A stretch of DNA of 64,000 nucleotides from Squalus acanthias (lineage: Eukaryota): positions 24,056,001 to 24,120,000 of the forward strand of contig CM059447.1 of assembly GCA_030390025.1 (NCBI GenBank). Reading direction: 5' to 3'. Below are positions 561 to 59,045 of this stretch, one piece after another. The notes beneath the pieces are model-generated. The model saw only the letters and a list, made by a program, of their open reading frames with translations, did no database searches and had not been told where the DNA came from. Positions within the stretch are counted from its first letter, which is position 1; each line of letters begins with the position of its first letter. Both the position numbers and the translations under genes were made by a program.

Positions 561-561
561 T

Positions 562-2911: not shown

Positions 2912-2917
2912 CTTTAT

Positions 2918-6594: not shown

Positions 6595-6933
6595 CTGAGA
6601 CAAAAAGCATTGTTCCTTGTCCGAATCGGTCTGATACTTTACCATGTCTTAGTCCAAAGACACAGAAGTAAATATCCGTGTCACTTTCCCGAAGATCTTT
6701 GAGGGTTATGGTGAATTTTTTCGCATCTCCTTCATACACAAGACGACTCTTGTATGACTCGTTTATCGTATTATTTAGTTTGTGGACATAGATCAGATCA
6801 ATAGGATTTGAAATGTTCCTTTTTAAATAGGTGCCTACAAGGATCACTTCTGTGGATGAAAATTCACAGTTTATTGAAACTGATTCTCCATTTTTCACTT
6901 GTTTAATGAGAGGAAACTGGGAAACATGGACAT
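6595..6933 (-). CDS. CD7: CD7-like gene, IgV exon (VJ-type V domain)
   Basis: 339-nt phase 1-1 exon bounded by TTTACAG and GTATGT. It encodes DVHVSQFP..GESVSINC..LVGTYLKR..PIDLIY..RLVYEG..FTITLKDLRESDTDIYFC..FGQGTMLFVS, which follows the CD7 pattern as I recall it (GxYL with no C-strand Trp, PxDxIY, SDTxxYxC, GxGT). Confidence 0.8.
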
Positions 6934-7142
6934 CTGTAAAATACACAATTGAAAATATAGTCAGTACAGTCAGAAAGCTCTGAATGCGATCATCAATTAT
7001 CAAACAAAACTTTCCCTTTGTGTAAATATTTCTTTAATTAAAAGAAGAATAGAGGTGAAGTAAGAGGGGACCATTGAGTGTAATCTCTAACATTTCATGT
7101 CACTGGAGAAAGATGGCTCCCTTGCATCATCTGAGTGTCCAG

Positions 7143-8442
7143 GGGCACGATTTTAATTCCCGAGGCGGGTTGGCGTCGGGTTGCGTGGTGGGCGGGTTCG
7201 GGAGCCGCTTCCGGCAGGATCAGCTGCAGAGTTGCGATTTTTATTAAACTAGCTTGTTAATTTCATGGAGGTGCGCTGGCCGGTCCAATGAGTGGGATTG
7301 GGTAGGCTGGCCGCCACTGATGATGTCATAATAGCAGCTACTTTTAAAGCTGCCATCCAGCCTGAGCCTTTCCATTGTGGATTCCTGCACTTCTTTTCAA
7401 AGCTATGACTTCTTTCAGAGGCAAGGCAGCTCCTCGGTTTAATGATGATTCCCTCCATGTTCTTGTGGATGCAGTCAGAGAGCGCAGGGAGATTCTCTTC
7501 CCCCCTGATGGCCAGAGGAAGCCTCCTCAGCAGACCAAGGCAGCCTGGCTGCACATTGCTCAGGAGGTGAGCGCAAGGTCCATATGTTCACGCTCATGGA
7601 TCCAGTGCCACAAAAGGTTTAATGATCTTGTGAGAACATCAAAAGTGAGTATCCCATCTCACTTGCCTTCACTCTGCTTCCCTTCTCTTCTCATCACCAG
7701 CACTCTGCTTAGTAAGCCTCCTCCTTCACATCCCACCTTACTCTTACTTCCCTTGCACCCTTTCCTATCCATCTCTGTCTCTGTACTAAATCACTTCAGC
7801 ATCCTGCCTATGCACCCTTTAGACTCGCTCTCACATGCAATGACAACAACTAACAACGCACAGGGAGCTTTCTTCCTCTTGGCACCTTACCCCATCTTCG
7901 TCTCCCACAAAGCTTCTATGGTAGGGATTAATCACACTCACTCCATCACTGTGGCTGAAACACCGCTTGTGTCCCTCCTTGCAGGAAAAGATAGCCCACA
8001 ATAAGAGGGAGGGAACATTGACCAGTGCTGAGGAGGCAGCAAACGAGAGTGTTAGAGGTGGCGAGGACCTGGAAGTGGGCGATGAAGAGACGGGCACACT
8101 AGAGGAAGCTGGCGACATAATAGATTTTCATCCCTCTCAGAAAGCAATGCAATATGATGTTCATAGAGAATCGCTTTGTAACATCTGCTCAAAAGGATGT
8201 GTCTGCTACATCAATGTCAGATGTTTAATTCAAGCCTTTACTCTCTCACAGGACCATCGAGCGCCTTAACTACCTGTCCCACCGGTTGGAGACGGGTCAG
8301 TTTGGGAGCGGCTAACCAGACACTCAGGAAAATCGGGTGGGAGCGGGATGGAAGCGGGTTGGGTGTCTGAAGCCATTTTTCCCGATTTTCCCAACAGACC
8401 CGCCTCCAAACCCGCCTCCTCAGGGCTATTAAAATCAAGTCC
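7143..8442 (+). mobile_element. Harbinger derivative encoding only the Myb/SANT protein, antisense in CD7-like intron 1
   Basis: TIR-like ends GGGCACGATTTTAAT / ATTAAAATCAAGTCC with flanking CAG/TAG. Myb exon 7405-7644 (PRFNDDSLHVLVDAV...AAWLHIAQEV...RSWIQCHKRFNDL) ends at a GTGAGT donor; exon 2 starts at 7985 (EKIAHNKRE). Confidence 0.8.
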
Positions 8443-11706: not shown

Positions 11707-11773
11707 CTGTCTGTTCTCCAGAAATCATTAAAAAGAAAAGGAACTGAAGAAGGTGGAATATTTGTGCAGCCAT
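11707..11773 (-). CDS. CD7: CD7-like gene, signal-peptide exon
   Basis: ATG at 11773; MAAQIFHLLQFLFFLMISGEQT plus one G before a GTAGGA donor. The 67-nt exon is phase 1 and splices in frame to the V exon (G|AT = Asp). Confidence 0.8.
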
Positions 11774-11819
11774 ACTTATTATTCACAGTTTACTTCTGTC
11801 AACACATTTTGGAAAGCAC

Positions 11820-31131: not shown

Positions 31132-31363
31132 NNNNNNNNNNNNNNNNNNNNNNNNNNNNNNNNNNNNNNNNNNNNNNNNNNNNNNNNNNNNNNNNNNNNN
31201 NNNNNNNNNNNNNNNNNNNNNNNNNNNNNNNNNNNNNNNNNNNNNNNNNNNNNNNNNNNNNNNNNNNNNNNNNNNNNNNNNNNNNNNNNNNNNNNNNNNN
31301 NNNNNNNNNNNNNNNNNNNNNNNNNNNNNNNNNNNNNNNNNNNNNNNNNNNNNNNNNNNNNNN
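31132..31363. other. Assembly gap (232 N)
   Basis: Run of N characters. Confidence 1.
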
Positions 31364-37174: not shown

Positions 37175-38222
37175 TTTTTCAGACCTCTTCGACTGTGCAC
37201 AAGATCTCAGGATTGTTATACAGCGCCTGCAAAGCCACATGGGTGCAGTCGATGGTACCCTGCACCATGGGGAAGCCCGCTATCCTGGCAAAGCCACATG
37301 AGCGCTCGTCCTGCTTCTCTCTGCTCAGAGAGAAGACATCGTAGTCCCTTCTCCTGGTGTCGAGAGCCTCAGTGACCTCCCGGATGCAGTGATGGACGGC
37401 AAACTGCGAGATGTCAGCTATGTCTCCTGCTGCAGACTGGAAGGATCCACCGGTGAAGAAAATGAGGGCCACGGTGACCTTGACTGCCACTGGGAGAGCC
37501 ATGTTCGCCCTGCTCTCCCTGCTCTCAGACTGCTGGTCTGGTTGTAGGAGGTGGCAGAGTTCTGTGACCACCTCCTTGGTGAAGCGGAGCTTCCTAATAC
37601 ACTGCTCCTCGCTTAAATGGATATAAGGGAAATGCTCTCAGAAGATCCTAGGTGGGTAAGACCTCCTGTTGAGAGCCCTCCTCCTCCTCCTCCCTCTGCG
37701 TACATCTTCTCCCCTTCTTCACTGCCTCCACTCCCTCTTCCAAAGATACTCAAGCATGAGGGGGACTCCCAGTAGAGCCCCCATGATTGTGAGAAAGTGT
37801 TGTGAACAGAAGCCTTTAAATTAGAATGGAGGCGTTCTCCACTTGCAACAACACTTCCTGTTACCTTAGAACCTTGAAAGAAGTTTAGAAAGCTGCTGGA
37901 GTTGCAGAAAGTTGCACAGAGCCAGTCAAACTGAACAAACATGTGAGGTGCAAGTAGCTGCTGTTTACATCACTGCTGGAGCCTCTTTCCTGCTTGTCAA
38001 TGCTTGCTCAGCTCGTCGAACTTAAGGCATGCCAAACTCGCAGATCAAGTGAGCATTGCACACTCACTGACGTCATGATCTGCACCGTTTCCATGAGTTT
38101 AGCGATCGCTGATATTGGCAGTGCAAAATTGGTGGACGTCGCGAGACCCGCTGGCAGCTAGCGTAAGAGTTCGCCCGAATCTAGCGGTAATAGGTGGCGC
38201 TAAGCCCCCGAATTTCTAGGGC
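37175..38222 (-). mobile_element. Truncated Harbinger element (one end plus N-terminal transposase) immediately 3' of SECTM1/B7-like gene A
   Basis: ELCHLLQPD..ALPVAVKVTVAL.FF..GSFQ..GFARIAGFPMVQGTIDCTHVAL; terminus GCCCTAGAAATTCGGGG at 38222. Confidence 0.85.
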
Positions 38223-38250
38223 ATTAATTTCAATCGCTATTAAGCATCGG

Positions 38251-41200
38251 TCACTTGGCATCTGTTAAAAGAAAAAAATAAATTATGAAAACAGTGACAC
38301 AAGTGCTTCAAAAAATAAGCTAATGCTTGAAATCACACCTACCATTGGCATTTCGGGTTCTCTCCTAATTGCTGAAATTAAAGCAAAAAAAATTAATTAA
38401 TTATTTCTGGTACACAAAATTTTATTTGAATTAACATTTCTAACTGTGAAAATTTGCAGTTAATTATTTCTTATAGTTCCAAATCTTCTAATCATGTACA
38501 AGAAAGACAGTAATCTCTGTACAATTGTGATAATATTGACAGTTATAAACAATGCTTACATTTTCATGAATTAAAATTCTAATAATTTCTCCTACTCCAT
38601 AGTCCAACCATAAAATTGATTTTAGAATCTATGGATCCAAAATAAGTGTAATCACCCATCCTATATGTAAGATTTCAGTCCTCTGGACTAGCAGGGTACA
38701 GTATTGTCGTGTTATGTTACCAAACTACTAATCCATAAAACCTGGACTATAATTCAGAGGATAGGAGTTCAAATCCTAACCATCGCATTGTGAGAATTTG
38801 AATTCAGTTTAAAAAAACGCTGGTACCAGTAAAGGTGACCATTGTCATAAAAACCAACTGGTTCACTGAAGTCCTTTAGGTCTGTCCTATATTTGACTCC
38901 AGTCTCACGCCAATGTGGTTGACTCTTAACTGATCACTGAATTAGCTTAGCAAGCCAATCAGACAACAAAGGAGAAGGCCCACCAGCACCTTCTCAGGGC
39001 AACTAGGATGGGCAATAGATGCCAGTTTTGCCAGTGGCGCCCACAACTAGAGAACGATTTTTTTGAAAGTTCCAGTTCTTACTTAAAGAATGTTTCCTTC
39101 CTTCAAACTTCCCCATCTGCCTTTCCATGTACCAAACACCATAACTTGGTACTTGAGACACCACAGGGGACTTTTTCCCACATCTCTTCCAACGCTGCTC
39201 GATGGCTGGATATGGCTCAATAGAAGGTGCACCAGAGCAGCTCAGTGTGACTCATCTGCGGCTGTTCTTCCTTCTCTCGGTGGGAGAGAGGTCGTGGGGG
39301 GGGATGCGTGGCTTGTATTGGTACATTACCTACTCCCTCTTCACCCAACTACTTTATCCAACTATGACATAAGGAAATCTGAAGATTGTAACTAATTCGG
39401 CAACATTCTTAGCTTTAGACGCCTCTAGATTTTACTTGAGCAAACTATTCAGCAAACGTTTTCCTGCTCAGTAAGATAAGGGTATTGAACTTCCAGTGGT
39501 TCAGCCAACAGCTTATCTAAGTCACACAACTCTGGGAAGTGAATTAGAATATCAGAAGCCGTTCAGAGTGTTTCAGATTCTGTTGCATCTTTCTTTTTAT
39601 TAAGCCTTGGAACTTGCACGGTTGGCACAACATATGGTTAAACTGAATTGTCAGGTTGCCAGATGATGGGCTTATTCAAAAAAAGCACCAACCAAAAGTA
39701 TTTTAAAACATAAGATGATGTCATAATTTATGTAATAAAGACTCAAAAAGTTTTAAAAGGAACCAGAAACATTTACACAACCATCATACCTGGACTGAAT
39801 TTTCTCCTGAATCGCAAAACCACCAAGATGGCTATTACAGATAAAAGTGCTCCAACAATGACAAAGACTGCTGTGGGGACCTTATTCCTTTTCTCTTCAT
39901 AATTAGGTAGATCCAAGACTGGAACTGAAAATTTGGAAAATGAAATTTAATTGTAAATTCCAGCTTCAACCTTTGTATGCATAATAATGTCATTTATTTC
40001 TACTCTTTTTTGACTATTAATTAGCAATAGATATGTTGAAGTTCAAACAACACTGTGAGGAAAAGGATTTGAACAGTTTAAAAAGAAGGCCCATAACCTT
40101 CTCTTGGAAAATAGACATGAGCATTAAGTACGGTCTTGTAGCATTGCCCACATCTTGAGAACAAATAAAAACAATATCAATTCTTTAAACAGCCATTTTC
40201 TGAGATTGTTTTGAATAAATACTATGAACTTACTTGGAAAGTGTTTCTGCACCTCGTATTTCTCCTCTTCCACATTCCACACGGCACAAGTATAATTACC
40301 TTCCAGGGCACATTCTGCTACTTTGATTGGAAGCGTGCTGGTGATCTTGAGCAGCCCCTGTCTGGTTTTCACACTACTACTTTTAGCCTTGAATGTGAGA
40401 TTCCTTTTATCATAGACAAACCAATGAATCTGAGCCAGTGGGTATCCAGTCGTTTCACAAGTGAGCTTTGTTGTTCTCATTGTTCTTGTGAGATTTGGGA
40501 ATAAGGTCACTTCTGGCAAACTGTATGGGGCTAAAAAAGACAATTACGTTGATATTAATGTAATGAGAGAGAGCTGTAGAATAATACAGGGGCGGCTTTT
40601 ACACTGCCCCGCCCAACCCAGCAAAAAATAACAACAGTTCTTGGTAAACAATAATTCCCAGATTTATGACATTAGTCTGGTTATATTCAGGTTACCTTAG
40701 GCTAGGGCTGTGATAGAGGAAAACATTTCATGGTACCAATTTGTCTTTTTGATTTGATTTCTGAATACCTGAATTTGAAACTGTTCAGGGAGCTTCAGAT
40801 TAGGCTGCACCTTTCTCTTTATCATTTTTGTCTTATTTAGAAAGTAGCTTATTCATTCATCTTGCATATTTTTCTGGTGTACATCTGTGTCCTCTGCCAA
40901 TCTAGTGATGGATTTGCACTGATATTATTGCTTAATTAGTATGGATAGGTAAGGAATGAAGCAGGATTTTATAAACCCCAAACCCACCATAATTTAATCT
41001 GGTACAGTCTAACGCCCACGTTAACTAACACACGTGCAATGTTTGAACAATATTAAAAATGGAGAATAAGAAATTGAATTTTTATACTGCAATACCCAGA
41101 GTAACAATAATTCATTAAAAATATATACTTATATTAATCCCTCTCCACAGCACTGCTTAGCACCATTAAAAACATCATCTGATTGAAAGGGAGGTTATCA

Positions 41201-42259
41201 CGTTTCAATGTTGCTGCTGATTGAAAATATATAAAAGTATTAGCTTGACTCAGTTTGGACCAATCCCACTCTGAGTGGGTTCAAGCCCCAGAAGGAGCAT
41301 GCATTGTTGAAAATGTTGTCTTTCAGATGAGAAATTAAATTGAGTCGCTCATCTACCTGCTCAGGTGGATAGAACAGTGGCGCTTTTCAGGGTGTTCTCC
41401 AGGTATCCTGGCCAACATTTGTTGTCCAACTATCACCACCAAAAAACAGATGAGCTGAGGATTCATTCAGTCATTTGCTGTTTGTGGAACTTTTCTATAT
41501 GCAAGTTGGCTGCTGTAATTGATTACATAACAGCATTGGCTGCACTTCAAAGCAATCAGTTGCTGTAATAGGTTTTGGGATGTTCTGAGGATGTGCAAGG
41601 TGCTATACAAATGCACAATCATTCTTTCTTTCCTCCCCAAACATTATAACATTCTGTTTGCCTAATGCACATGTCAAGCTTTTATAGGACTGGAATAAAA
41701 CTGGAATTTGTTGCCAATTAGAGGCAACCAATATTCTACAAGAAAAACTAGCAGAGAAAGTACAATTTAACCCACCTTTAACCTTCAGTGTGATGTATTG
41801 ACTGGCGTAACCAGCAACAGTTTCCAAATAATATTGATAGCTTCCACTATCTGACAGTTGTGTTTTCTCGATTACCAGTGATATATCTTGTGAATCTTGA
41901 TGAAGGAATTTAATTCGACCCTGAGCTCCTCCGACACTTCCCTCTGAGTTAAAGACAGGTGTTATTTTTTCACCTTCTCCATATTTACTCAGTTCGATGA
42001 AACTAAACTTGTTCACCTTTGTTGATTTGAATGTGCATGGTAGTATGGTGTCTTCATTAAATATTCCTGTCACTGAATGGTCACAATCTAAAGTCACGTA
42101 CTCTGAAAAACAATCATTTTCATTAACTCAGATTACCTCAATGACAATCGGTGTTGAATGAGTTATATACTGAGACGCACTTCAGTACTTACTTTGTGCA
42201 GAGGATGTGCTTGTGTATAAGATGACATAAAGAAGACATATTGTATGGTATGAACCCAT
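38251..42259 (-). CDS. SECTM1-like / B7-family IgV-IgC type I membrane protein, copy A (~289 aa)
   Basis: Exons: leader 42193-42259 (MGSYHTICLLYVILYTSTSSAQ), V 41776-42102, C 40234-40530, TM 39790-39924, cytoplasmic 38339-38371, terminal 38251-38261 (DAK*). All junctions are AG/GT, phase 1, and the frame is open (870 nt). An alternative donor after 38343 would change the tail. Confidence 0.85.
38695..39065 (+). mobile_element. tRNA-headed SINE in the copy A TM-cytoplasmic intron
   Basis: Same family as 28740-29165; only a ~40-bp remnant persists in copy B (~52868-52905). Confidence 0.65.
39790..39924 (-). CDS. Copy A transmembrane exon
   Basis: IPVLDLPNYEEKRNKVPTAVFVIVGALLSVIAILVVLRFRRKFSP; a hydrophobic run followed by a basic stop-transfer segment. 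Confidence 0.88.
40234..40530 (-). CDS. Copy A IgC exon (B7/PD-L1-type)
   Basis: APYSLP..LTCETTGYPLAQIHW..GLLKITSTL..NYTCAVWN; 297 nt. Confidence 0.9.
41240..41630 (+). mobile_element. DeuSINE-like SINE in the V-C intron (paralog at ~55860-56300)
   Basis: Similar to 51088-51545 and shared by both gene copies. Confidence 0.6.
41776..42102 (-). CDS. Copy A atypical IgV exon (SECTM1-like)
   Basis: KYVTLDCDHSVTGIFNEDTILPCTF..FIELSK..PVFNSE..GRIKF..ISLVIEKTQLSDSGSYQYYLET..QYITLKVK; Tyr stands where the DxGxYxC Cys would be. Confidence 0.9.
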
Positions 42260-43753
42260 TTCCAGACTTCAGTTCACCTGCTGATACAAGGACAATACAG
42301 AAAAATTAAAAGCTCGCGGATCTAATCAAACCTGATTTCATTCTTCTTGTGTATCATAAGTTAGGTTTCGTCAAGAACTTTAAACAACCATATATCACTG
42401 ACCTAAAACTCACATCAGATGCATTTATATTGTTAGAAATTATTGAATTATTTTGCATGTTATTGTTAAAACTAACATACATTTTGTTGTGTTTTCCTAC
42501 AATTCTCACTGCGAGAATCACAGAATCTGTGAACTGGCAGCAGTATACAAATGAAATCGGTAATAACTCCCTATTTCATTTATTATTAGTACTTCTTTTC
42601 TTGCTAATGTTCTCCCCTGCCCTCCTCCTCTGCAGCCATTGACTCTGAGAGAGAGAGAGAGAGAGAGAGAGGATACAGTTCCACTGGCACTGGTTGGTTT
42701 CTGATAGTTCACCCAAATGGCCTTTATTCATTGTGCGAGCCCTGATATAAAATGGTAGAATATCCATGGAGGTTCCCTGATTTCCCACCGTAACTTCAGT
42801 GGAAGATCTGTGGAAACCCTGGAGAAACAGCGTAAATTCCAGGAGTGAGCTATTCTGACACAGGGTGCATCGCAACTGAATAATTAGGACAATTCTGGAG
42901 CTCCACAATCAGGGATTAAACCCCAGACCTTCCTGGTCTTGCTACAGCTCAGCTACTTATTGGATAAACACAATGAACAATCAGGAAAGACACATTTAAG
43001 TATCCTAATACTTTTCTAGTTTATCTCTAAATGTTTCCACGCGTACAAAATTTATTTTTCGGCCATTCTTTCAGCAAACATATCACCATTTGCACCGACA
43101 CAATCTCTAATGTTCCACATATCAGCATAGGAATCTTGAAAATGCTTTAACGCTCCAGGCAATTCAAAAAAATCCGTCCGAGAAAGTTTTGTTTTAATTT
43201 GGCAATCTCCTCCAAAAATAAGAAATTGGCAAGCAATTCAGGTAAAGAATTAAATTTACATATTTTTGGAAGTAACTTAAATATATTTTTATATTATATT
43301 GTGTGGCTAGATTACAGTATAATAGGAGGTTTCTGTTTCCTTGACCAGATTTTGTAGACAATAAAAAACATCTTTTACATGTTCTCACACATTAAGGCCA
43401 TTCTTTCCCACTGCCAGTGAATATTAACGTACAAAGCTGACAGAAAATTGCAGTTTTTAACCAGATCCCACAGAAATGAATCTTCTGCATTAGTCCCTGA
43501 TTCAATGGGCTGGATTTTCTCAATGGAGACGTGCTGGAGGCGGGAATTCTGGTTTCCGGGTTTCAGTCCCGCCCCCAGCGACGTCTGACCAACGCACGCT
43601 ATTTTCCCTTGATTGGCCTGGTTAAGCCCGCCCCTGCGGGCTTACCGGCTAATTAAGGGAAAGCCGGTGACAGATGACGTCAGCGTATGACACTTAATCT
43701 GTCGAAAATTTTTGGACAGCTGAATTGTCAGCGTTTGACAGCTTTGAGAAGCT

Positions 43754-45766: not shown

Positions 45767-45843
45767 ACACACACACACACACACACATAGACATCCATAC
45801 ACACACACACAGACACATATAACTGTACATACACACACACACA
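45767..45843. repeat. (CA)n-type microsatellite in intron 1 of copy A (shorter in copy B, ~58483-58509)
   Basis: Direct inspection. Confidence 0.85.
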
Positions 45844-45989
45844 ACGATGTTTTACACAAGTATCAAGGAAGCAATATGCTTTAAGTTTTTGAATGTCAGA
45901 CTGTACCTTAGTTCCAACCACAATGCGGAGATCCAGCCAGCTCAACACGAAACAGGGGTTCAAATTGACCCAAGAAAAGTCACCATTCA

Positions 45990-46380
45990 AATTCCGAGAA
46001 TTTGACATATGTTGCGAATGATTCCGGGATCTCGGCGCGGAGTATCTGCTCAGATGAATTGGAACCAAGCGCTGGGATCTGCGAGGAGCGAGTGGGACTG
46101 TCGGCTCGATCCACTCTCCAGTCTGGGAGAGCGACCAGCGCCTGTTACCTTGTGTCAGTACAAACAGTGACCAAGGTTGTCTGGCGCTCCTCCACTGTCT
46201 CTCTGCACACCTGTGCTGTTGAAAATGAACACAGAAAACAGCTGGCTCTCCCGTTTTCCCCCCTCCTTAAACTTTCTGTTTCGATATGAGTGGATAGCAG
46301 CCAAGTTGGCAAAGGAAGAGTTTCGATGGAAAAATAACCCAAATGTGCCTGAGGTGTCACTGAACTTTCCCCACCAGCAC
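45990..46380 (-). promoter_or_regulatory. Putative promoter and non-coding exon 1 of copy A with interferon-response motifs
   Basis: Donor CAAG|GTAAC at 46149; the leader exon has an acceptor at 42277 and so needs an upstream exon. ISRE/IRF-E GAAACAGAAAGT at 46271-46282, GAS TTCCGAGAA at 45992-46000, and locally CpG-rich sequence. Confidence 0.6.
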
Positions 46381-49501: not shown

Positions 49502-50989
49502 GAGATATTTACAATGTTAAGCAAAATGGGGCAGGCACGGAGTTTGGGTAGTCAGGAGTTTAGTGGGATGGAGTTAAGGGAGGGAGCAGCAGGTAGGTCT
49601 CAGCTGGAATGAGCTTGGATAGAGCAGGGGGGCGGACATGAGGGAGAAAGTTTATGCTCAGTTAGCTGATCTCAGCTGGGGAAGGAGTGGGCAGACCACA
49701 ATTGACCTCAGCACCCCTGCACTATTGTGGTGGGAATTGGCCAGGACTGCTGCTAGAAGTGCATAAGGGCTAGATTTGAACTATTGAGCAGGCGACCGGT
49801 GGAGCACGCCAGCCAGCTACCTGTTCCGGCAGTGAAGAGGATGGAGCCATTTTGAGGCAAGGCCCTCATTTAAATAGAAGCAACGTGAACGGGCTGCAGC
49901 TCGCTGGATTTGGCCTGGTGCAATATCACGTGGCCCAGCCAGCAGCCAAGGTAGGCCCTGGAGGGATAGCAATCACGGGGAAGTGGGGACAGTGTGGGGG
50001 GAAGAGAGTGAAACCCAGAGCGCCAGTTGACCAAATTATTTTTGTCTGGCTTGGAAGAGCACTCCTGCTCCTCATTGCCCCACATGCCATAATAAGGTTT
50101 TCCTGTCATACGAAAGAAGGAGTATAGCCCACAAAATTATTCAAACTTATGTTTTTGGACCTCTTTGGCTGTAGTGGCAATAAAACGTGCACACGTACAC
50201 TCAATCAGTTCTGTCATAAAATGGCAATCGGTGTCCTATGCCCGCCCCCGTCATCAGACCCCGATTTATATATTAAAACGGGCCAATTGTCTGAAACAGG
50301 CAGACGCTTCGACAACCCAGGAGTAAGCACTTGTAAAAATGGCGGGGTCCCAAAGCATCAGCATTAACGGGACGCTGACTACAAACCCCATTTTAAGGCC
50401 ACTACAGACCCAGTGACGCCAAGTTAAAATTGGCCCTTAAGTGTCAGGCATGGTTGTGAAGCATCCCATTGTTAAGTAGCCTGCTAACATTCATAGCCAA
50501 GGCCGACACAGGAGTAATAGAGCATGTTGGGCAACCATAGAACAATAATGCAGCAAGGAGTCAATGCCTTCTACAGAGGGAAGGGTAGAATCTGTTAAAA
50601 GGAAAGCTATTAACATACAAGTGACACTATGTATGAAATTAGCTATCCAAGTGTTTGTGCTAAGATAATGAGCTTCAAAGCACACATTTTCCAAAGGCAG
50701 GATGCAAGATTTGCATGAACTAGAACTGGTTTTATGGAATTCTTATTTGACAAACTCTGAATAATTAATTTCCTGTTCAGGAATATCTGGAAAGCACTAA
50801 CGATTGCTCATTCTGATACAGGTATGGGATCATCAAAGTTAGTTTATACTAAGAGCAAAACTGGGCTCAGACTCCATGATTTTAGTGGAGCTTTAACTTA
50901 AATCAGAGACTCTGTTATTTTGTAAATCTCTTCGTGATAAGGTTTTCCTCGAGATTCTTACACAGCATTTGCTGTAATTAGTGTACCGA

Positions 50990-51071
50990 GTAGTCATGGC
51001 CGAGTGGTTAAGGCGATGGAATAGAAATCCATTGGGGCCTCCCAGCGCAGGTTCGTATACTGCCGACTACA
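50990..51071 (+). pseudogene. tRNA-Ser(AGA)-derived pseudogene
   Basis: GTAGTCATGGCCGAGTGGTTAAGGCGATGGAATAGAAATCCATTGGGG..GCAGGTTCGTATACTGCCGACTAC follows the vertebrate tRNA-Ser pattern, but the B-box/T-arm is damaged (GTTCGTATAC). Confidence 0.8.
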
Positions 51072-51087
51072 ATTCCCATCAGTTTAA

Positions 51088-51545
51088 AGTGTCAGCTGTG
51101 GCTCAGTTGGTAGCACACTTACCTCTGAGTCAGAAGGTTGTGGGTTCAAAGTCCCACTCCAGATACTTGAGCATAAAAATCTAGGCTGACACTCCAGTAC
51201 TGAGGGAGTGCTGCACTGTCAGAGGCGCCGTGTTTTGGATGTGATATTAAACCGAGGCCCCGTCAGCCCTCTCAGGTGGCCATAAAAGATCCCATGGCAC
51301 TATTTCGAAGAAGAGCAGGGGAGTTATCCCCCGGTGTCCTGGCCAATATTTATTTCTCAATCAACATCACTAAAACAGTTTATCTGATCATTATCACATT
51401 GCTGTTTGTGGGAGCTTGCTGTGCGCAAATTCGCTGCCGCGTTTCCCACATTACAACAGTGTACTTCATTGGCTGTAAAGCGCTTTGGGACATCTGGTGG
51501 TCGTGAAAGGCGCTATATAAATGCAAGTCTCTCTTTTTCTTTTAA
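51088..51545 (+). mobile_element. Full-length tRNA-derived SINE (DeuSINE-like)
   Basis: A box TGGCTCAGTTGG, B box GGTTCAAAGTCC, central domain and GCGCTATATAAATGCAAGTCT tail. Confidence 0.8.
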
Positions 51546-51796: not shown

Positions 51797-52618
51797 CGCT
51801 TGTATCGATTGGCTTCAACTGTGCCATAGGACAAAGCAGTAAATCAATATGTTGGAGGACAAAGTAGAAGATCAACTTGATTTACATTAAAGTGATTTAC
51901 AGTCATTATTAATATGTAAATATAATTGTCCATTTGCACAATTTTGAAAATAAGGCGATCCTCTCTCTACTTCAGTTTTCCCATGTAGCCGCCAGCAACC
52001 ACATTTCCCCTTTCACTGAGAGGGAAGTCCAGTCCAGCACACAAACCTTTTCACGATATTTCTGTAATCAACCAACAGGAAGCATATTCTCAAAGTACAA
52101 CTGGGCCTAAATTTTCTTCCCCTTTTACAGTGTAGTGATGTCACGCACTGATCCATTTACTATCCCAGCTGTAAAATAATGATACTCCTTGAATGAGACC
52201 AGCCAGGATTGAGGGCGAAGCTCTCTCGTGTGCAGTCTTCTGTTTGGGGACCCAGTGATTTACCAATGGCGCTAGTAGACAACCAATATGTGGCATTGTC
52301 TCTTTATAGACAAAACTAATAGTGAAGAGTTCAGCAAAGTGCCACAGGTCAATCAGGTTTACTATCCTGGACAGTAACTGCATTTAAAAAAATAGATGTC
52401 ATTGGAGAGGAAAGTGACAGTGCTTGAATTAATCGGTGTGATGTAAATTCACATTTCATTATTCACATGTTACAAAAAGGACATGGCTGGGCTGTACATT
52501 TGAAGCATCATGTCACAAAATGTTCTTAAAGTAGTCCATGACATTGATGTCAGTGCATTCTTCACAAATAGAAATAAGAATTATTCATTTCGATCACTAT
52601 TAAACATCAGCCTTCTGG

Positions 52619-55600
52619 TCACTTGGCATCTGTTAAAAAAAAAATAGAAATTATGAAAACAGTGACACAAGTCCTTCAAAAAATAAGCTAATGTTTGAAA
52701 TCACACCTACCATTGGGATTGTGGATTCTTCCCCAATTACTGAAAGAAAAAGCAAAAAAAAATAATTATTTCTGGTACACAAAATCTGATTTAAATTAAA
52801 GTTTCCAGCTGTGAAAATTTGCAGTTCATTATTTCTTATAGTTCCAAAACTTCTAATCATGTATAAGGATGTAATGCCGGCTTTGCCAGCGACACCCACA
52901 ACTAGACAATTCTTTTTAAGTTTCAGTTCCTACTTAAAGAATGTTTCCTTCCTTCCCCTCACCCATTTAATTTTCCCTATACCAAACACCATAACTTGGT
53001 ACTTGAGACACCACAGGGGACTTTTTCCCACATCTCTTCCAACGCTGCTCGATGGCTGGATATGGCTCAATAGAAGGTGCACCAGAGCAGCTCAGTGTGA
53101 CTCATCTGTGGCTGTTCTTCCTTCTCTCGGTGGGAGAGAGGTCGGTGGGGGGGGATGCATGGCTTATGTTGGCACATTACCTACTCCCTCTTCACCCAAC
53201 TACTTTATCCAACTACAACATAAGGAAATCTGAAGATTGTAACTAATTCGGCAACATTCTTAGCTTTAGACGCCTCTAGATTTCACTTGAGCAAACTATT
53301 CAGCAAACGTTTTCCTGCTCAGTAAGATAAGGGTATTGAACTTCCAGTGGTTCAGTCAACAGCTTATCTAAGTCACACAACTCTGGGAAGTGAATTAGAA
53401 GGACAGAAGACATTCAAAGTGTTTCAGATTCTGTTGCATCTTTCTTTTTATTAAGCCTTGGAACTTGCACGGTTGGCACAACATATGGTTAAACTGAATT
53501 GTCAGGCTGCCAGATGATGGGCTTATTCAAAAGAAGCACTAACCAAAAGTATTTTAAAACATAAGATGATGTCATAATTTATGTAATAAAGACTCAAATG
53601 TTTTAAAAGAAATCAGAAACATTTACACAACCATCATACCTGGACAGAATTTTCTCCTCAAGCGCAAAACTGTCAAGATGGCTATTCCAGATAAAAGTGC
53701 TCCAACAATGACAAAGATTGCTGTGATAACCTTATTCTTTTTCTCTTCACTTTGGCGACCATGATTAGGTAGATCCAAGACTGGAACTGAAAATTTTCGG
53801 AGGAAAACATAATAAATTGTAAATTCCAGCTTCAATCTTTGTATGCATAATGATGTCATTCATTTCTATTCTCTATGACTATATTAATTATCAATAGATA
53901 TGTTGAAGTTCAAACAACACTGTGAGGAAAAGGACTGCAACAGTTTAAAAAGAAGCCCCACAACCTTCTCAGGGAAAATAGTCATGAGCATTAAGTACAG
54001 TCTTGTAGCATTGCCCACATCTTGAGAACAAATAAAAACAATATAAATTCTTTAAAAAGCCATTTTCTGAGATTGTTTTGAATAAATACTATGAACTTAC
54101 TTGGAAAGTGTTTCTGCACCTCGTATTTCTCCTCTTCCACATTCCACACGGCACAAGTATAATTACCTTCCAGGGCACTTTCCGCTACTTTGATTGGAAG
54201 CGTGCTGGTGATCTTGAGCAGCCCCTGTCTGGTTTTCACACTACTACTTTTAGCCTCGAATGTGAGATTCCTTTTATCATAGACAAACCAGTGAATTTGA
54301 GCCAGTGGGTATCCAGTCGTTTCACAAGTGAGGGTTGTTGTTCTCATTGTTCTTGTGAGATTTGGGAATAAGGTCACTTCTGGCAAACTGTACAGTGCTG
54401 AAAAAGATAATTACATTGATATTAATGTAATGAGAGAGAGCTGTAGAATAATGCAGGGGCGGCTTTTACACTGCCCCGCCCAACCCAGCAAAAAATAACA
54501 ACTATTCTTGGTAAACAATAATTCCTAGATTTATGACATTAGTCTGGTTATATTCAGGTTATGATGCAGAGATGCCGGTGTTGGACTGGGGTGGACAAAA
54601 TTGAGAGGTCGCACAACACCAGGTTATAGTCCAACAGTTTTATTTGACTTCACCTGAGGAAGGAGCAATCGATAGCTCCGAAAGCTTGTGATTTCAAATA
54701 AAACTGTTGGACTATAACCTGGTGTTGTGCGACCTCTCAATTATATTCAGGTTACCTTAGGTTAGGGCTGTGATAGAGGAAAACATTTCATGGTACCAAT
54801 TTGTCATTTTGATCTGATTTCTGAATACCTGAATTTGAAACTGTTCAGGGAGTTTCAGAGTAGGCTGCACCTTTCTCTATCATTTTTGTCTAATTTAGAA
54901 AGTAGCTTGTTCATACATCTTGCATATTTTTCTGGTGTACATCTGTGTCCTCTGCCAATCTAGTGATGGATTTGCACTGATATTATTGCTTAATTAGTAT
55001 GGATAGGTAAGGAATGAAGCAGGATTTTATAAATCCCAAAATCCACCATAATTTAATCTGGTACAGTCTAACGCCCATGTTAACTCACACATTTGCCATG
55101 TTTTAACAATATTAAAAATGGAAAATAAGAAATTGCTTTCTTAAACTGTAAACTCAAAAAAAATATACTGTAGCATTCACTCGCCACAGCACTGTTCAGC
55201 AGCATTACAAAATCGTGTTATTGAATGGGAGTTTTTTTTTAATGTTGCTGCTGATTGAAAATAGATGAATGTATTAGCTTGAATCAGTTGCCATTTTAAT
55301 TCTCTGTTCCACTCGCACTCCGACCTCTCTGTCCTCGGCCTTCTACACGGTTCTAATGAAGCTGAACGGAAGCTCGAGGAACAGCACCTCATCTTTCGAT
55401 TAGGCACTTTACCGCCTTCTGGACTCAACATTGAGTTCAACAATTTCAGATCATAACCACCGCTGCCATTTTTTCGTACAGCAGGTAATGGTTCTGTTGT
55501 TGCCACTTACAGCTCCTCTAGACCCATCTTTTGTTTCTTTACTTGTCCCATTACCATCCCTTTTTACCTTGCACCATCATCCCTTTTGTCATTTAATCAC

Positions 55601-56942
55601 TCCAGCCTTCCACCCTATCACAGACCTTCCCTTTTGTTCTTTCCTCTCTCCTCCCACCCCCCGACTTTTCCTGCCTCTGTACTTGCATAAAACCTGTTGC
55701 ATTTGTAACATTTTCCAGTTCTGACGAAAGGTCAATGACCTGAACCGTTAACTCTGTTTCTCTCTCCACAGATGCTGCCTGACCTGCTGAGCATTTCCAG
55801 CATTTTCTGTTTTTAGTTCAGATTTCCAGCATCCGCAGTATTTTGCTTTTGCGTTGGAACCAATCCCACTTCGGAGTAAGAAGGCTGTGCATTTAATGTC
55901 CCACTATGCACTTAGGAACATCATCTCGCCTAGCACTTCAATGCAGTACTGAGGGAGCATGCATTGTTGAAAATGTCATCTTTCGGATGAGATATTAAAT
56001 TGGGATCCCCATCTACCTGCTCAGGTGGATAGAAAAGATCCTGTGGCACTATTGAAACAGGAGCAGGTGTTCTCCAGGTATCCTGCCCAACATTTGTTGT
56101 TCAACTATCACCACCAAAAAACAGATGAGCTGAGGATTCATTCAGTCATTTGCTGTTTGTGGAACTTTTCTATATGCAAGTTGGCTGCTGTAATTGATTA
56201 CATAACAGCATTGGCTGCACTTCAAAGCAATCAGTTGCTGTAATAGGTTTTGGGATGTTCTGAGGATGTGCAAGGTGCTATACAAATGCACAATCATTCT
56301 TTCTTTCCTCCCCAATCATGACCCACATTATAACATTCTGTTTGCCTAATGCACATGTCAAGCTTTTATAGGATTAGAATAAAACTGGAATTTGTTGCCA
56401 ATTAGAGGCAACCAATATTCTACAAGAAAAAACTAGCAGAGAAAGTACACTTTAACCCACCTTTAACCTTCAGTGTGATGTCTTGACTGTCGTAACCAGC
56501 AACAGTTTCCAAATAATATTGATAGCTTCCACTATCTGACACTTGTGTTTTCTCAATTACCAGTGATATATCTTGTGAATCTTGAAGGAATTTAATTCGA
56601 CCCTGAGCTCCTCCGACACTTCCCTCTGAGTTAAAGACAGGTGTTATTTTTTCACCTTCTCCATATTTACTCAGTTCGATGAAACTAAACTTGTTCACCT
56701 TTGTTGATTTGAATGTGCATGGTAGTATGGTGTCTTCATTAAATATTCCTGTCACTGAATGGTCACAATCTAAAGTCACGAACTCTGAAAAACAATCATT
56801 TTTTATTAAGTCAGATTACCTCAATGACAATCGGTGTTGAATGAGTTATATACTGAGAAGCACTTCAGTACTTACTCTGTGCAGAAGGTGTGCTTGCGTA
56901 TAAGATGACATAAAGAAGACTTATTGTATGGTATGAACCCAT
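52619..56942 (-). CDS. SECTM1-like / B7-family IgV-IgC type I membrane protein, copy B (~292 aa)
   Basis: Exons: leader 56876-56942, V 56461-56784, C 54101-54397, TM 53640-53786, cytoplasmic 52707-52739, terminal 52619-52629 (DAK*). Splice sites are canonical and the frame is open (879 nt). Confidence 0.85.
53640..53786 (-). CDS. Copy B transmembrane exon
   Basis: IPVLDLPNHGRQSEEKKNKVITAIFVIVGALLSGIAILTVLRLRRKFCP. Confidence 0.88.
54101..54397 (-). CDS. Copy B IgC exon (B7/PD-L1-type)
   Basis: ALYSLP..LTCETTGYPLAQIHW..ITSTL..NYTCAVWN; 297 nt. Confidence 0.9.
54562..54740. mobile_element. Short Penelope-type insertion with internal inversion and 14-bp TSD, specific to copy B
   Basis: TTATATTCAGGTTA is duplicated at 54548-54561 and 54741-54754 but single in copy A (~40681). 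Inverted arms of ~47 bp surround a hammerhead-like core. Confidence 0.85.
55287..55852 (+). mobile_element. Penelope-like element 3' fragment (GIY-YIG endonuclease C-terminus and 3' UTR), specific to copy B
   Basis: Encodes CHFNSLFHSHSDLSVLGLLH..RKLEEQHLIFRLGTLPPSGLNIEFNNF*, followed by CTGACGAAAGGTCAATGACCTGAACCGTTAAC. Confidence 0.85.
56461..56784 (-). CDS. Copy B atypical IgV exon (SECTM1-like)
   Basis: 324 nt; matches copy A except for 5 substitutions and a one-codon deletion. Confidence 0.9.
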
Positions 56943-58649
56943 TTCCAGACTTCAGTTCACCTGCTGATCTAAGGACAATACAGAAAAATCATTAAACACT
57001 CAGGGATCTAATCAAACCTGATTTCACTTTTCCTTTGTATCATTAGTTAGGTTTTGACAGGAATTTCAAATAACCATATATCACTGAACTAAAACTCACA
57101 TCAGATACACTTGTAGTGCTAGAAAATTTTGAATGATCAGAATTATTTCACGTGTTACTGTTAAAACTAAGTGCATTTTGTAGTGTTTTCCTACAATTCT
57201 CTAGCAAGAATCCCAGAATCTGTGAACTGACAACAGTATACAAATGAAATCGGTAATAACTCCAGACTTCATTTATTATTAGCACTTCTTTTCTTGGTAA
57301 TATTCTCCACTGCCCTCCTCCTCTGTAGTCGTTGACTCCATGAGAGAGAGTATTCAGTTCCACTGGCAAGAGTTGGTTTTTGATACTTCACTCAATTGGC
57401 CATTATTCATTGTGCAAGCCCTGATATAAAAGGGCAGATTTTTCGTGGAGGTTCCCCGATCTCCCACCATAACCTCAGTGGAAGATCAGTGGAAATCCTG
57501 TTTGGAGGAGTGAGTGTTGGCAGGTTATTCCATCACAGGTTGCATTGCAACTGAACAGTCAGGACAATGCTAGAGCTCCACAACCAGGGATTAAAACCCA
57601 GACCTTCCTGGTCTCTCTACAGCTCAGCAATTACTGGATAAACACAATGTGCAATCAGTCATGACTCATTTAACTAACCTAATACTTTTCTAGTTTATCT
57701 CTGTGTTTAACAATCTCTGAATGTTTCCCAGCAGTTCCATCGGCTGCCCGAGTTTATAATTTAAGGTGGTGCATGGTGCTAATGCAACAAGGCTACATTT
57801 TTCGGGCTATGTACCCAAGAAATTAAGCCAGTTCAGCAGTTTTATTGCACATCTTAAGTCAGTGAGGAGGCCAATGTCCACATTGCACCAATGCAAGAGG
57901 TAACTGGGGCATAAATCTGTTGATGTTTCTGGCATAAGAAGCAATACAGATTACTGATGAACTACTGCTCTCTAATGGAGCCACATAAACTAATGGACTG
58001 CACTTGAGATTGTTTTTTTTTAGCTTTCCACTTTCCAGCACGAGTTATTTGATAGAGACCAGCAGTGGGATCTCTGGCTGCTTTTACTCCTTTCTAGTTA
58101 CAGGAATACTGAGGCTGATTGTACTGAAAATGTTAAACTGTTTACTGCATTTATTTCTGTTGAACCAATATCCGCCCCCCCCCCCTCCCCTCCACCATCC
58201 CTTAACCCAATTTTCCTCAATTATTTTGCGGTTGCAAGAGGCAGTTTCTGGTTCCAAACATCCGGGCTTTTTAACTTCTAAATCTGAAAATAAAGTTAAG
58301 GGAATTGAACCCTTTCATATATTGCAGTGAAAGTAACAGTATGTCAGAGATTGCTGAGAGATAGTTTGCTCACAGATGCTTATTTGTTTGATGTGAGTTA
58401 CTGTTTTAAAGTCCAAAATGTAGGGGCTCATTTATCTCTGATTTTAGTACAGCGACCTTCCCAAAGCAAGCCACAGAGACCGACACACACACATATTCAC
58501 ACACACACAATGTTTTACAGAAGTATCAAGGAAGCAATATGCTTTAAGTTTTTGAATGTCAGACTGTACCTTAGTTCCAACCACAATGCGGAGATCCAGC
58601 CAGCTCAACACGAAACAGGGGTTCAAATTGACCCAAGAAAAGTCACCAT

Positions 58650-59045
58650 TCAAATTCCGAGAATTTGACATATGTTGCGAATGATTCCGGGATCTCGGCG
58701 CGGAGTATCTGCTCAGATGAATTGGAACCAAGCGCTGGGATCTGCGAGGAGCGAGTGGGACTGTCGGCTCGATCCACTCTCCAGTCTGGGAGAGCGACCA
58801 GCGCCTGTTACCTTGTGTCAGTACAAACAGTGACCAAGGTTGTCTGGAGCTCCTCCACTGTCTCTCTGCACACCTGTGCTGTTGAAAATGAACACAGAAA
58901 ACAGCTGGCTCTCCCGCTTTCCCCCCTCCTTAAACTTTCTGTTTCGATATGAGTGGATAGCAGCCAAGTTGGCAAAGGAAGAGTTTCGATGGAAAAATAA
59001 CCCAAATGTGCCTGAGGTGTCACTGAACTTTCCCCACCAGCACTG
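58650..59045 (-). promoter_or_regulatory. Putative promoter and non-coding exon 1 of copy B
   Basis: Donor at 58812, ISRE at 58934-58945, GAS at 58655-58663; nearly identical to copy A. Confidence 0.6.

What the first reader, a model, noticed from the sequence alone, without database searches (positions are those of the whole stretch)
6595..59045. Candidate ancient CD7-SECTM1 receptor/ligand cluster in a probable cartilaginous fish
Seen: a CD7-like single-V gene with, upstream on the same strand, a tandem array of membrane IgSF genes whose V domain has an unusual signature. Established: in mammals CD7 and its ligand SECTM1 (K12) are adjacent, co-oriented genes with SECTM1 upstream, and mouse has tandem Sectm1 duplicates. 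Inference: this window is the orthologous locus. If so, the linked CD7/ligand pair dates to the base of jawed vertebrates. To my knowledge SECTM1 is described mainly from mammals, and these genes would probably be auto-annotated as generic PD-L1-like or CD276-like.
Basis: partly seen in the sequence, partly recalled or inferred. Interest (0 to 1): 0.92.

Follow-up and report, generated by a model that had tools for sequence, protein, structure and literature searches.

The report
Shark CD7-like gene beside B7-type ligands
A shark genome piece carries a CD7-like receptor gene next to tandem, expressed B7-type membrane genes whose outer domain shows the odd cysteine pattern of mammalian SECTM1, hinting that the CD7/SECTM1 pair is far older than thought, though this is not yet proven.

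Summary
On the minus strand lie a CD7-like gene (leader 11707-11773, joined VJ exon 6595-6933; later exons not in the window) and, upstream, two full tandem copies of a V-C-TM gene (38.2-46.4 kb and 52.6-59.0 kb), plus the start of a third unit. Spliced contigs from three public runs confirm the exon borders. The C domain is B7-type (CD276 9.7e-17, PD-L2, PD-L1). The V domain lacks the classical disulfide and has a cysteine 15 residues before the B-strand cysteine. That pattern is conserved in 34 of 36 aligned fish relatives. It matches what a 2015 paper describes for SECTM1, which that paper calls eutherian-specific. Catshark relatives of both genes share a chromosome, and in one assembly their accessions are four apart. 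Orthology is not shown. No SECTM1 sequence could be fetched, so there was no direct comparison. The genes carry an extra C domain, the flanking genes are out of reach, and an assembly gap (31132-31363) separates receptor and ligands. This scan had already noted the same stretch (s1-889953, s1-890047, s1-890048). Verdict: real cluster, interpretation partly supported, about even odds of homology with SECTM1.

The parts
11707..11773 (-). CD7-like gene, leader exon (ATG at 11773, phase 1 donor)
   Evidence: tblastn of catshark P0002 gives 18 of 22 identical residues. The donor is gt.
6595..6933 (-). CD7-like gene, germline-joined VJ exon (339 nt, phase 1-1). Later exons were not found in the window.
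   Evidence: V-set 3.1e-10. It is 63-65% identical to catshark CD7-like proteins. The FGQGT J motif aligns with antibody J.
45907..46359 (-). Ligand copy A, non-coding exon 1. The 3' end is fixed; the 5' end is only estimated from contig length. It carries an ISRE-like site at 46272-46282 and a GAS-like site at 45992-46000.
   Evidence: The loose end of a spliced contig at 42285 matches 45907-45935 exactly. The donor is gt.
42193..42285 (-). Ligand copy A, leader exon (ATG at 42259). The acceptor dinucleotide is gt here and ag in copy B.
   Evidence: tblastn of P0004 and P0006. Joint 42102|42195. Splice context.
41776..42102 (-). Ligand copy A, atypical IgV exon (Cys6, Cys22, YQYYLE in place of YxC)
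   Evidence: V-set 6.9e-9. Joints 40530|41776 and 42102|42195. Signature table.
40234..40530 (-). Ligand copy A, B7-type IgC exon
   Evidence: Ig_3 7.9e-10. PDB matches: CD276 9.7e-17, PD-L2 9.2e-8, PD-L1 4.5e-5. Joints.
39790..39924 (-). Ligand copy A, stalk and transmembrane exon
   Evidence: Hydrophobic scan. Joint 39924|40234. tblastn.
38181..38371 (-). Ligand copy A, last two coding exons (38343-38371 and 38181-38261). An 8-nt deletion relative to copy B shifts the frame of the last codons.
   Evidence: tblastn hit AIRREPEMPMV. Reading frames.
58570..59022 (-). Ligand copy B, non-coding exon 1 (5' end estimated)
   Evidence: Exact match of the contig loose end at 58570-58598. This stretch is 99.6% identical to copy A.
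56876..56968 (-). Ligand copy B, leader exon (canonical ag acceptor)
56461..56784 (-). Ligand copy B, atypical IgV exon (one codon shorter than copy A)
   Evidence: V-set 2.8e-9
54101..54397 (-). Ligand copy B, B7-type IgC exon
   Evidence: Ig_3 6.7e-11 and C2-set_2 1.8e-4
53640..53786 (-). Ligand copy B, stalk and transmembrane exon (4 codons longer than copy A)
52600..52739 (-). Ligand copy B, last two coding exons (52711-52739 and 52600-52629), ending in the conserved MPSDQKADV stop
   Evidence: the same tail is seen in other sharks
62167..64000 (-). Start of a third repeat unit, which runs off the window
   Evidence: 45827-51333 equals 58491-64000 at 99.6%. Family D2 has three copies.
31132..31363 (.). 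Assembly gap, intergenic, next to a purine-rich low-complexity tract (31364 to about 32800). It separates the CD7-like gene from the ligand array.
   Evidence: It is the only N run. Flanks are and repeat family D1.

Best explanation
The window holds a receptor/ligand-style immune gene cluster of a shark.

The tandem genes encode type I membrane glycoproteins of the B7 family. Each has a leader, an atypical IgV, a B7-type IgC, a transmembrane helix and a short tail. They are transcribed from a non-coding first exon that carries ISRE- and GAS-like sites.

Their IgV has lost the classical inter-sheet disulfide and has a second cysteine 15 residues before the B-strand cysteine. This is the same peculiarity published for mammalian SECTM1.

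Downstream on the same strand lies a CD7-like gene with a germline-joined VJ domain. Its catshark homologues have an uncharged transmembrane helix and a YEDM (PI3K-binding type) tail motif.

I infer that the ligands, on presenting or epithelial cells and probably induced by interferon, bind the CD7-like receptor on lymphocytes and co-stimulate through PI3K. I also infer that this B7 subfamily is the pre-mammalian homologue of SECTM1, which would have lost its IgC exon on the way to eutherians.

Shown: gene structures, splicing, domain types, signature, order and orientation. Inferred: binding, signalling, interferon control, and homology with SECTM1.
For: -
- Spliced contigs give joints exactly at the predicted borders in runs X1, X2 and X5 (two studies). 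There are none in the DNA-like run X9. Exon 1 is fixed.
- Cys6 and Cys22 are present in 36 of 36 aligned family members. An aromatic residue stands at the F-strand Cys position in 34 of 36.
- PMC4603632 (section 18 read) describes SECTM1 as follows: invariant Cys-38 and Cys-55, no classical bridge, and the motif GxYxWxLxGxQ. Here the motif is GxYx[YF]x[LVM].
- The same paper and PMC3769348 (passages) place SECTM1 next to CD7, with tandem duplicates in rodents.
- V-TM forms without the C domain exist in a skate (P0044) and the basking shark (P0055).
- The catshark ligand P0012 is GCB61899.1 and the catshark CD7-like P0001 is GCB61903.1. The S. canicula ligands and CD7-like proteins are on one 131,918,509-bp contig.
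- NCBI names the catshark homologues CD7-like, and two of the three have a YEDM motif. CD7's YEDM motif binds PI3K according to a title cited in PMC2193045.
- An Atlas structure search with P0001 gave 'CD7 molecule' and 'T-cell antigen CD7' as its first two rows. This is a lead only.
- ISRE-like sites: 2 of the 3 strict matches in the window lie at the two first exons.
Against: - There was no direct comparison with any SECTM1 sequence, because none could be fetched.
- phmmer of the V exon against 1.84 billion representatives gave 55 hits at E <= 0.001. Those I identified were elasmobranch or teleost B7-like proteins and long multi-Ig proteins. None was SECTM1, and about 30 long hits were not name-checked.
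- A V-only profile against PDB gave only generic Ig matches.
- The motif matches at 4 of its 6 invariant positions only, one of them as Y or F for W.
- SECTM1 has one Ig domain; these genes have two.
- PMC4603632 reports no SECTM1 outside eutherians by tBLASTn.
- The flanking genes are unknown.
- The assembly gap lies between receptor and ligands.
- The tail exons of the CD7-like gene are outside the window. One catshark homologue (P0002) lacks YEDM, and YEDM also occurs in CD28H and CD28X (PMC11599192 passages).
- Copy A has a gt in place of the ag acceptor of its leader exon and a frameshifted tail.
- The spliced contigs differ from the window by about 3%. They therefore show expression of a close copy or close relative, not strictly of these copies.
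Confidence: 0.45

Rival explanations
1. The array is a fish-specific, fast-evolving B7 subfamily (a PD-L/CD276-like offshoot) with no descent relationship to SECTM1. On this view the shared cysteine pattern is convergent and SECTM1 arose later in eutherians. The neighbouring CD7-like gene may or may not be its receptor.
For: - The IgC is clearly B7-type, and NCBI names the relatives CD276 or PD-L-like.
- SECTM1 is reported as eutherian-specific (PMC4603632).
- No SECTM1 was identified among the 55 phmmer hits.
- Two motif positions do not match.
- Loss of the classical disulfide has happened in other Ig families. This last point is my own knowledge, not tested here.
Against: - Two independent coincidences would be needed. 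One is the same rare Cys arrangement with almost the same spacing (15 against 16 residues). The other is the same position, strand and tandem habit next to a CD7-like gene.
- tBLASTn negatives are weak evidence for fast-evolving immune ligands.
- V-TM members show that the C domain is easily lost.
Confidence: 0.35
2. The single-V gene is not the CD7 orthologue. It would be another germline-joined VJ receptor (NKp30-like, or a fish-specific family), so the locus is a different B7-type receptor/ligand cluster, comparable to NKp30/B7H6.
For: - The V domain's best solved matches are simply antibody V domains.
- Atlas feature hits are generic V-set clusters and include ICOS, NCR3-like and CTLA4-like ones.
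- The tail exons are missing from the window.
- The name 'CD7-like' is automatic.
Against: - The catshark homologues have an uncharged TM helix and a YEDM tail rather than a charged TM residue.
- The CDR3 region lacks the PPP and EIP motifs that define CD28X, CD28H and CD28HL (sequence compared with PMC11599192 passages).
- The ligand IgC did not bring B7-H6 into the 60 best solved matches.
- The first two Atlas structure rows are CD7 clusters.
Confidence: 0.2

Closest known systems
Mammalian SECTM1 (K12), ligand of CD7
   Same: Both are type I membrane IgSF proteins. Both have an Ig-like domain without the classical disulfide but with two N-terminal cysteines (16 residues between them in human, 15 here). 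Both have an aromatic residue in place of the F-strand Cys inside a GxYx(aromatic)xL motif. Both lie upstream of a CD7(-like) gene on the same strand and occur as tandem duplicates in some lineages. SECTM1 is interferon-responsive, and here ISRE- and GAS-like sites lie at exon 1. Sources: PMC4603632, PMC3769348 and PMC13223139 passages.
   Different: SECTM1 has a single Ig domain and a short stalk. These genes add a B7-type IgC. The G and Q at the end of the SECTM1 motif are not matched. No sequence-level comparison was possible. SECTM1 is published as eutherian-specific.
B7 family ligands CD276 (B7-H3), PD-L2, PD-L1
   Same: They share the V-C-TM architecture, one phase-1 exon per domain, the APYS junction between V and C, and significant IgC similarity.
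   Different: The IgV lacks the classical disulfide and the Trp and is too diverged to match any B7 IgV strongly. The best full-length V matches were VSIG4 1.4e-6, VTCN1 9e-6 and BTN2A1 6.5e-5 with a profile. The inconsistent automatic names argue against one-to-one orthology with any of the three.
CD7
   Same: Both have a single VJ-type V domain. The catshark homologues have an uncharged TM helix and a YEDM tail motif, and they carry an automatic CD7-like name.
   Different: The stalk, TM and tail of the window's gene were not seen. The catshark stalk is cysteine-rich, not proline-rich as I recall it for human CD7. No phylogeny was made.
NKp30 / B7H6 pair
   Same: Both are a VJ-type receptor paired with a B7-family ligand. 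Linkage of this pair in some non-mammals is my own recollection and was not checked here.
   Different: There is no charged TM residue in the catshark homologues. The IgC here resembles CD276 and PD-L rather than B7-H6.

Membership tests
B7 family | Extracellular IgV followed by IgC, then a TM helix and a short tail, with one exon per domain in phase 1 | tested here: met
   spliced contigs
B7 family | IgC significantly similar to the IgC of known B7 members | tested here: met
   CD276 9.7e-17 (each domain about 6-8e-6), PD-L2 9.2e-8, PD-L1 4.5e-5
B7 family | IgV with the classical B-F disulfide and C-strand Trp | tested here: not met
   34 of 36 family rows have Y or F at the F-strand Cys position. 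The window copies read FIEL where Trp would be.
SECTM1 | [quoted passage not shown] | tested here: met
   Cys6 and Cys22 are present in 36 of 36 rows, 15 residues apart (14 in two teleosts). The classical Cys is absent in 34 of 36.
SECTM1 | Invariant motif GxYxWxLxGxQ (PMC4603632) | tested here: inconclusive
   G, Y and L match, with Y or F standing for W. The last G and Q do not match (T and A here), although an invariant G lies three places further on.
SECTM1 | A single Ig domain joined by a stalk to the TM helix | tested here: not met
   The window genes have V plus C. V-TM relatives do exist: P0044 in a skate and P0055 in the basking shark.
SECTM1 | Detectable sequence homology with eutherian SECTM1 | not testable with these tools
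   No SECTM1 sequence could be fetched. None was identified among the 55 phmmer hits. No SECTM1 entry appeared among the 60 best of 814 PDB matches.
SECTM1 | Lies next to CD7, on the same strand and upstream of it | tested here: inconclusive
   This is true for the CD7-like gene in this scaffold, but across an assembly gap. It is supported by the catshark accessions being four apart and by the shared chromosome. CD7 orthology itself is not shown.
SECTM1 | Binds CD7 | not testable with these tools
   This needs a multimer model or binding assays.
CD7 | Single V domain of the germline-joined VJ type | tested here: met
   V-set 3.1e-10. FGQGT aligns with antibody J.
CD7 | Uncharged TM helix and a cytoplasmic YEDM motif | not testable with these tools
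   These exons are not in the window. The features are present in catshark P0001 and P0003 and absent in P0002. The motif is not unique to CD7 (PMC11599192).
CD7 | Conserved synteny with 17q25.3 markers and a phylogenetic position with tetrapod CD7 | not tested
The notes of this scan hold none of the eight marker names. No reference CD7 sequence was available.
CD28 family (CD28X, CD28H, CD28HL) | CDR3-region motif YxCx6PPP..GxG or YxC..EIP (PMC11599192) | tested here: not met
   The window reads YFCVFGLRHGKVSDRFGQGT, which has no PPP or EIP (sequence against passages).
NKp30 | Charged residue in the TM helix for adaptor pairing (my own knowledge) | not testable with these tools
   The TM exon is not in the window. 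The catshark homologues have no charged TM residue.

The most novel reading that the evidence does not exclude
SECTM1 is not a eutherian invention. On this reading it is the remnant of an ancient B7-family ligand (IgV-IgC) that has sat next to its receptor gene CD7 since the common ancestor of jawed vertebrates. It acquired its atypical N-terminal disulfide early; eel-type relatives still keep both the old and the new cysteines. It lost the IgC exon on the way to mammals. CD7 would then be one more B7 receptor alongside CD28, PD-1 and NKp30.
Probability: 0.4. Interest if true: 0.8.

Novelty: new variant of a known kind. Interest (0 to 1): 0.62.

Why it matters
SECTM1 is published as eutherian-specific and of unknown origin (PMC4603632). 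It is not counted among the B7 ligands. If this B7 subfamily with the SECTM1-type V domain, sitting beside a CD7-like gene in a shark, is its homologue, three things follow:
- SECTM1 would gain a family and a history of more than 400 million years.
- The CD7 pathway would belong to the original co-stimulation toolkit of jawed vertebrates.
- About three dozen inconsistently named elasmobranch genes (CD276, PD-L1-like, PD-L2-like, hemicentin-like) would have one explanation.

The question can be tested directly with public chromosome assemblies and one profile-profile comparison.

Tried and rejected
- Direct retrieval of SECTM1 failed by every route. Three word-based protein searches reached only elasmobranchs. 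phmmer of the V exon over 1.84 billion representatives gave no identified SECTM1. The Atlas gave only unnamed or generic clusters. Its first hit for skate P0044 is an unnamed 243-aa chordate cluster of 310 members without a Pfam family, which I could not identify. A V-only profile against PDB gave generic Ig hits. A scan of viral contigs for a poxvirus SECTM1-like gene found 84 pattern matches but no relative.
- PD-L1, PD-L2 or CD276 orthology is rejected as the filing. The IgC identity is modest, the IgV is atypical, and the automatic names disagree with one another.
- CD28-family membership of the single-V gene is rejected on its motifs.
- B7-H6 was not among the 60 best solved matches of the IgC.
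- I searched the window for further family exons and for the missing CD7-like exons with tblastn at a permissive threshold. None was found apart from the two copies.
- The large ORFs between the genes are transposon remnants: DDE_Tnp_4, Myb, GDSL/endonuclease/RT of a LINE.
- Flanking synteny could not be tested. The scan's notes hold none of the eight 17q25.3 marker names and cannot be asked beyond the window.
- Papers. No paper in the held library describes SECTM1 outside mammals or CD7/SECTM1 in cartilaginous fish. I saw passages of PMC3769348, PMC2193045, PMC11599192 and PMC13223139; for PMC4603632 I read passages and all of section 18. The other papers I saw only in search listings.
- Supplements were not opened. 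The data sheets of PMC11599192 and the figshare SECTM1 alignment of PMC4603632 may bear on both orthology claims.
- The joined spliced protein of the window genes was never built or searched. All searches were exon by exon or used database proteins.


Full report
**What is there.** The window is 64 kb with one N run, at 31132-31363. Everything of interest is on the minus strand. Five open frames carry Ig domains. Pfam gives V-set 3.1e-10 for 6560-7003. It gives V-set 6.9e-9 and 2.8e-9 for the two frames at 41.6-42.1 kb and 56.4-56.8 kb. It gives Ig_3 7.9e-10 and 6.7e-11, with weaker CD80-like C2-set hits, for the two frames at 40.1-40.5 kb and 54.0-54.4 kb. A hydrophobicity scan found one transmembrane exon downstream of each V-C pair. 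A self-comparison shows a tandem duplication with a period of 12.7-14.7 kb. The gene bodies are 88-93% identical, but 45827-51333 equals 58491-64000 at 99.6% up to the window's end. A third unit therefore probably follows beyond the window. The long ORFs between the genes are transposon remnants: a Harbinger-type DDE transposase, a Myb-like domain, and the esterase, endonuclease and reverse transcriptase of a LINE.

**The gap.** The N run lies in no exon. Its left flank is unique sequence. Its right flank opens a 1.4 kb purine-rich low-complexity tract, which probably broke the assembly. It does lie between the single-V gene (6.6-11.8 kb) and the array (38.2 kb onwards). The adjacency claimed by the finding therefore rests on the scaffold join. 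I could not test continuity, because the single reads call went to the ligand gene.

**The single-V gene.**
- The V exon is 6595-6933 and the leader exon 11707-11773. Both have gt donors and phase 1 borders.
- Its end reads FGQGTMLFV, a J-like stretch that aligns with antibody J segments. The best solved matches are simply antibody V domains.
- A protein search found three relatives among six candidates, all catshark proteins 63-65% identical. Two are named 'T-cell antigen CD7-like' by NCBI.
- These relatives continue with a cysteine-rich stalk, an uncharged transmembrane helix and a tail. In two of the three the tail holds YEDM.
- A YEDM motif through which CD7 binds PI3-kinase is named in a title cited in PMC2193045. 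PMC11599192 finds YEDM in CD28H and CD28X as well, so the motif is not unique to CD7.
- The CDR3 region here has neither the PPP nor the EIP motif that PMC11599192 uses to define the CD28 family.
- tblastn with the catshark proteins found no stalk, TM or tail exon in 1-6594. The gene runs off the window.
- An Atlas search with catshark P0001 gave generic V-set clusters by features. By structure, 'CD7 molecule' and 'T-cell antigen CD7' were the first two rows, at TM about 0.5. This is a lead, not a test.
- I recall that human CD7 has YLRQ where other V domains have Trp, and the shark protein reads YLKR at that place. This is recalled and was not tested.

**The array genes.**
- Relatives gave the leader (ATG at 42259 and 56942) and the last exons.
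- Copy A has seven exons: a non-coding exon 1 ending at 45907, leader 42193-42285, V 41776-42102, C 40234-40530, TM 39790-39924, 38343-38371, and 38181-38261. Copy B is co-linear.
- Contigs of three small public runs (X1, X2, X5; two studies, two coded organisms) join 39924 to 40234, 40530 to 41776, and 42102 to 42195. These are exactly the predicted borders, with GT..AG ends on the gene strand. The large DNA-like run X9 shows none of these joints.
- The letters that follow the leader exon in one such contig match the window exactly at 45907-45935 and 58570-58598. A gt follows there. This fixes the 3' end of a non-coding first exon in both copies.
- The contigs differ from the window by about 3%. 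They show that this gene type is expressed and spliced in a close copy or close relative.
- Copy A has gt in place of the ag acceptor of its leader exon. It also has an 8-nt deletion that replaces the conserved end MPSDQKADV by a longer unrelated tail. Copy B is intact in both respects.

**What family.**
- The C domain is B7-type. Its best solved matches are CD276 (9.7e-17 over two domains), PD-L2 (9.2e-8) and PD-L1 (4.5e-5), and the V-C junction reads APYSLP.
- The V domain alone finds nothing significant in PDB (best E 0.047).
- A profile search found 34 relatives among 2840 candidates, all sharks and rays. Their names are 6 CD276, 6 PD-L1-like, 9 PD-L2(-like), 6 assorted adhesion-molecule names and 7 uncharacterised.
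- Accession numbers show tandem arrays in Heterodontus (XP_067914187 to 191) and Cetorhinus (XP_078427026 to 037).
- phmmer of the V exon against 1.84 billion representatives gave 55 proteins at E <= 0.001. Those with full V coverage are elasmobranch proteins, teleost 'CD276 antigen homolog' proteins (Hoplias, Brachyhypopomus, Prochilodus) and an eel protein. The rest are long multi-Ig proteins matched over short stretches.
- I name-checked 10 of the 55. Six more were already named. I read the sequences of 15 others. About 30 long hits were not checked. None that I saw was SECTM1.
- Two relatives lack the C domain altogether: P0044 of a skate and P0055 of the basking shark, both V-stalk-TM.

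**The signature and SECTM1.**
- In an alignment of 36 family members, Cys6 and Cys22 of the V exon are invariant. They are 15 residues apart, or 14 in two teleosts.
- The place of the classical F-strand cysteine holds Tyr in 32 members, Phe in 2 and Cys in 2. The local motif is GxYx[YF]x[LVM].
- The two members that keep the classical Cys (an eel protein and a fragment) also keep the C-strand Trp, and they already have the extra N-terminal Cys.
- PMC4603632 (passages, and section 18 read in full) describes the 58 known SECTM1 proteins. They have one Ig-like region (Trp-33 to Val-133) and two invariant cysteines, Cys-38 and Cys-55. These lie 'rather close in sequence' at the N-terminal side. 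No classical bridge is present. The invariant motif is G113xYxWxLxGxQ123.
- The distances agree. Cys to Cys is 17 positions in human and 16 here. The second Cys to the motif's Gly is 58 in human and 64 here. The motif's Gly to the domain end is 20 in human and 22 here.
- Four of the six motif positions match, counting Y or F for W.
- The same paper states that SECTM1 is absent outside eutherians. It places it beside CD7, with two copies in rodents. PMC3769348 says the same of the mouse.

**Linkage elsewhere.** In S. torazame the ligand P0012 is GCB61899.1 and the CD7-like P0001 is GCB61903.1. In the newer assembly both gene types are on the 170,482,615-bp contig. In S. canicula two ligand genes and two CD7-like genes are all on the 131,918,509-bp contig. 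This fits conserved linkage but does not prove adjacency.

**Regulation.** A strict ISRE pattern occurs three times in the window. Two of these are at 46272-46282 and 58935-58945, in gene sense inside or near exon 1 of the two copies. A GAS-like TTCCGAGAA lies at 45992 and 58655. SECTM1 is interferon-responsive with STAT1/GAS sites (passage of PMC13223139; PMC4603632 background). PD-L1 is too, from my own knowledge, so this does not discriminate.

**What could not be done.**
- No SECTM1 sequence could be obtained, so the central homology claim has no alignment or profile test.
There is therefore no model, no check that the two cysteines can bond, and no view of the neighbouring genes in other sharks.
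- The scan's notes hold none of the eight 17q25.3 marker names.
- A V-only profile made from whole, naturally V-only proteins gave generic Ig matches in PDB. The widest V matches were VSIG4, VTCN1 and BTN2A1.
- A viral scan found no relative.
- The joined spliced model of the window genes was left out on purpose. All searches were exon by exon.

**Verdict.** The array is a distinct B7 subfamily, so it should not be filed as SECTM1, whose single-domain architecture it does not share. It does carry the published SECTM1 V-domain hallmark, and it sits where SECTM1 sits relative to a CD7-like gene. Two independent and individually rare agreements make descent from a common CD7-linked ligand about as likely as not. 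I put that at 0.4-0.45, against 0.35 for an unrelated fish B7 subfamily with a convergent pattern. The scan's first stage had already noted this stretch three times (s1-889953, s1-890047, s1-890048). My checks agree with those notes as far as they go.

Noticed in passing
window 38181-38261 and 42283-42287 (copy A), compared with 52600-52629 and 56966-56970 (copy B): Copy A has an 8-nt deletion in its last coding exon. This replaces the conserved C-terminus MPSDQKADV by a 26-residue unrelated tail. Copy A also has gt where copy B has the ag acceptor of the leader exon. Copy A may be decaying, or these may be assembly errors.
   Followed up: partly
C-termini of P0005, P0008, P0010, P0011-P0013, P0015, P0022 and window copy B (52600-52629): The short cytoplasmic tails of most shark family members end in a conserved PMM(P/S)S..(A/T)D(V/A/I) stop. 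This looks like a PDZ-type C-terminal motif. Nothing comparable is described for SECTM1 in the passages I read.
   Followed up: no
window 45827-51333 compared with 58491-64000: The upstream and intergenic part of the repeat unit is 99.6% identical between copies, while the gene bodies are only 88-93% identical. This suggests recent gene conversion or unequal crossing-over confined to the promoter and intergenic part, or an assembly collapse.
   Followed up: partly
P0080 (eel) and P0084 (unnamed fragment): These relatives keep the classical B-F cysteines and the C-strand Trp and already have the extra N-terminal cysteine. They look like an intermediate state between a normal B7 IgV and the disulfide-shifted form.
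   Followed up: partly
P0038 (Rhinoraja) and P0017, P0018, P0020, P0021 (stingrays): Rays have variants with two atypical V domains and no C (V-V-TM) and variants with V-C-C. Domain shuffling is therefore active in this family.
   Followed up: no
window 31364-32800: A 1.4 kb purine-rich (GGA/GGGGA) low-complexity tract lies directly right of the assembly gap. It yields long spurious Gly/Arg/Glu and Pro/Ser ORFs on both strands.
   Followed up: partly
window 1006-2141 (+) and 37179-37677 (-): Two Harbinger-type transposase remnants about 79% identical to each other. One lies downstream of the CD7-like V exon and one just downstream of ligand copy A.
   Followed up: no
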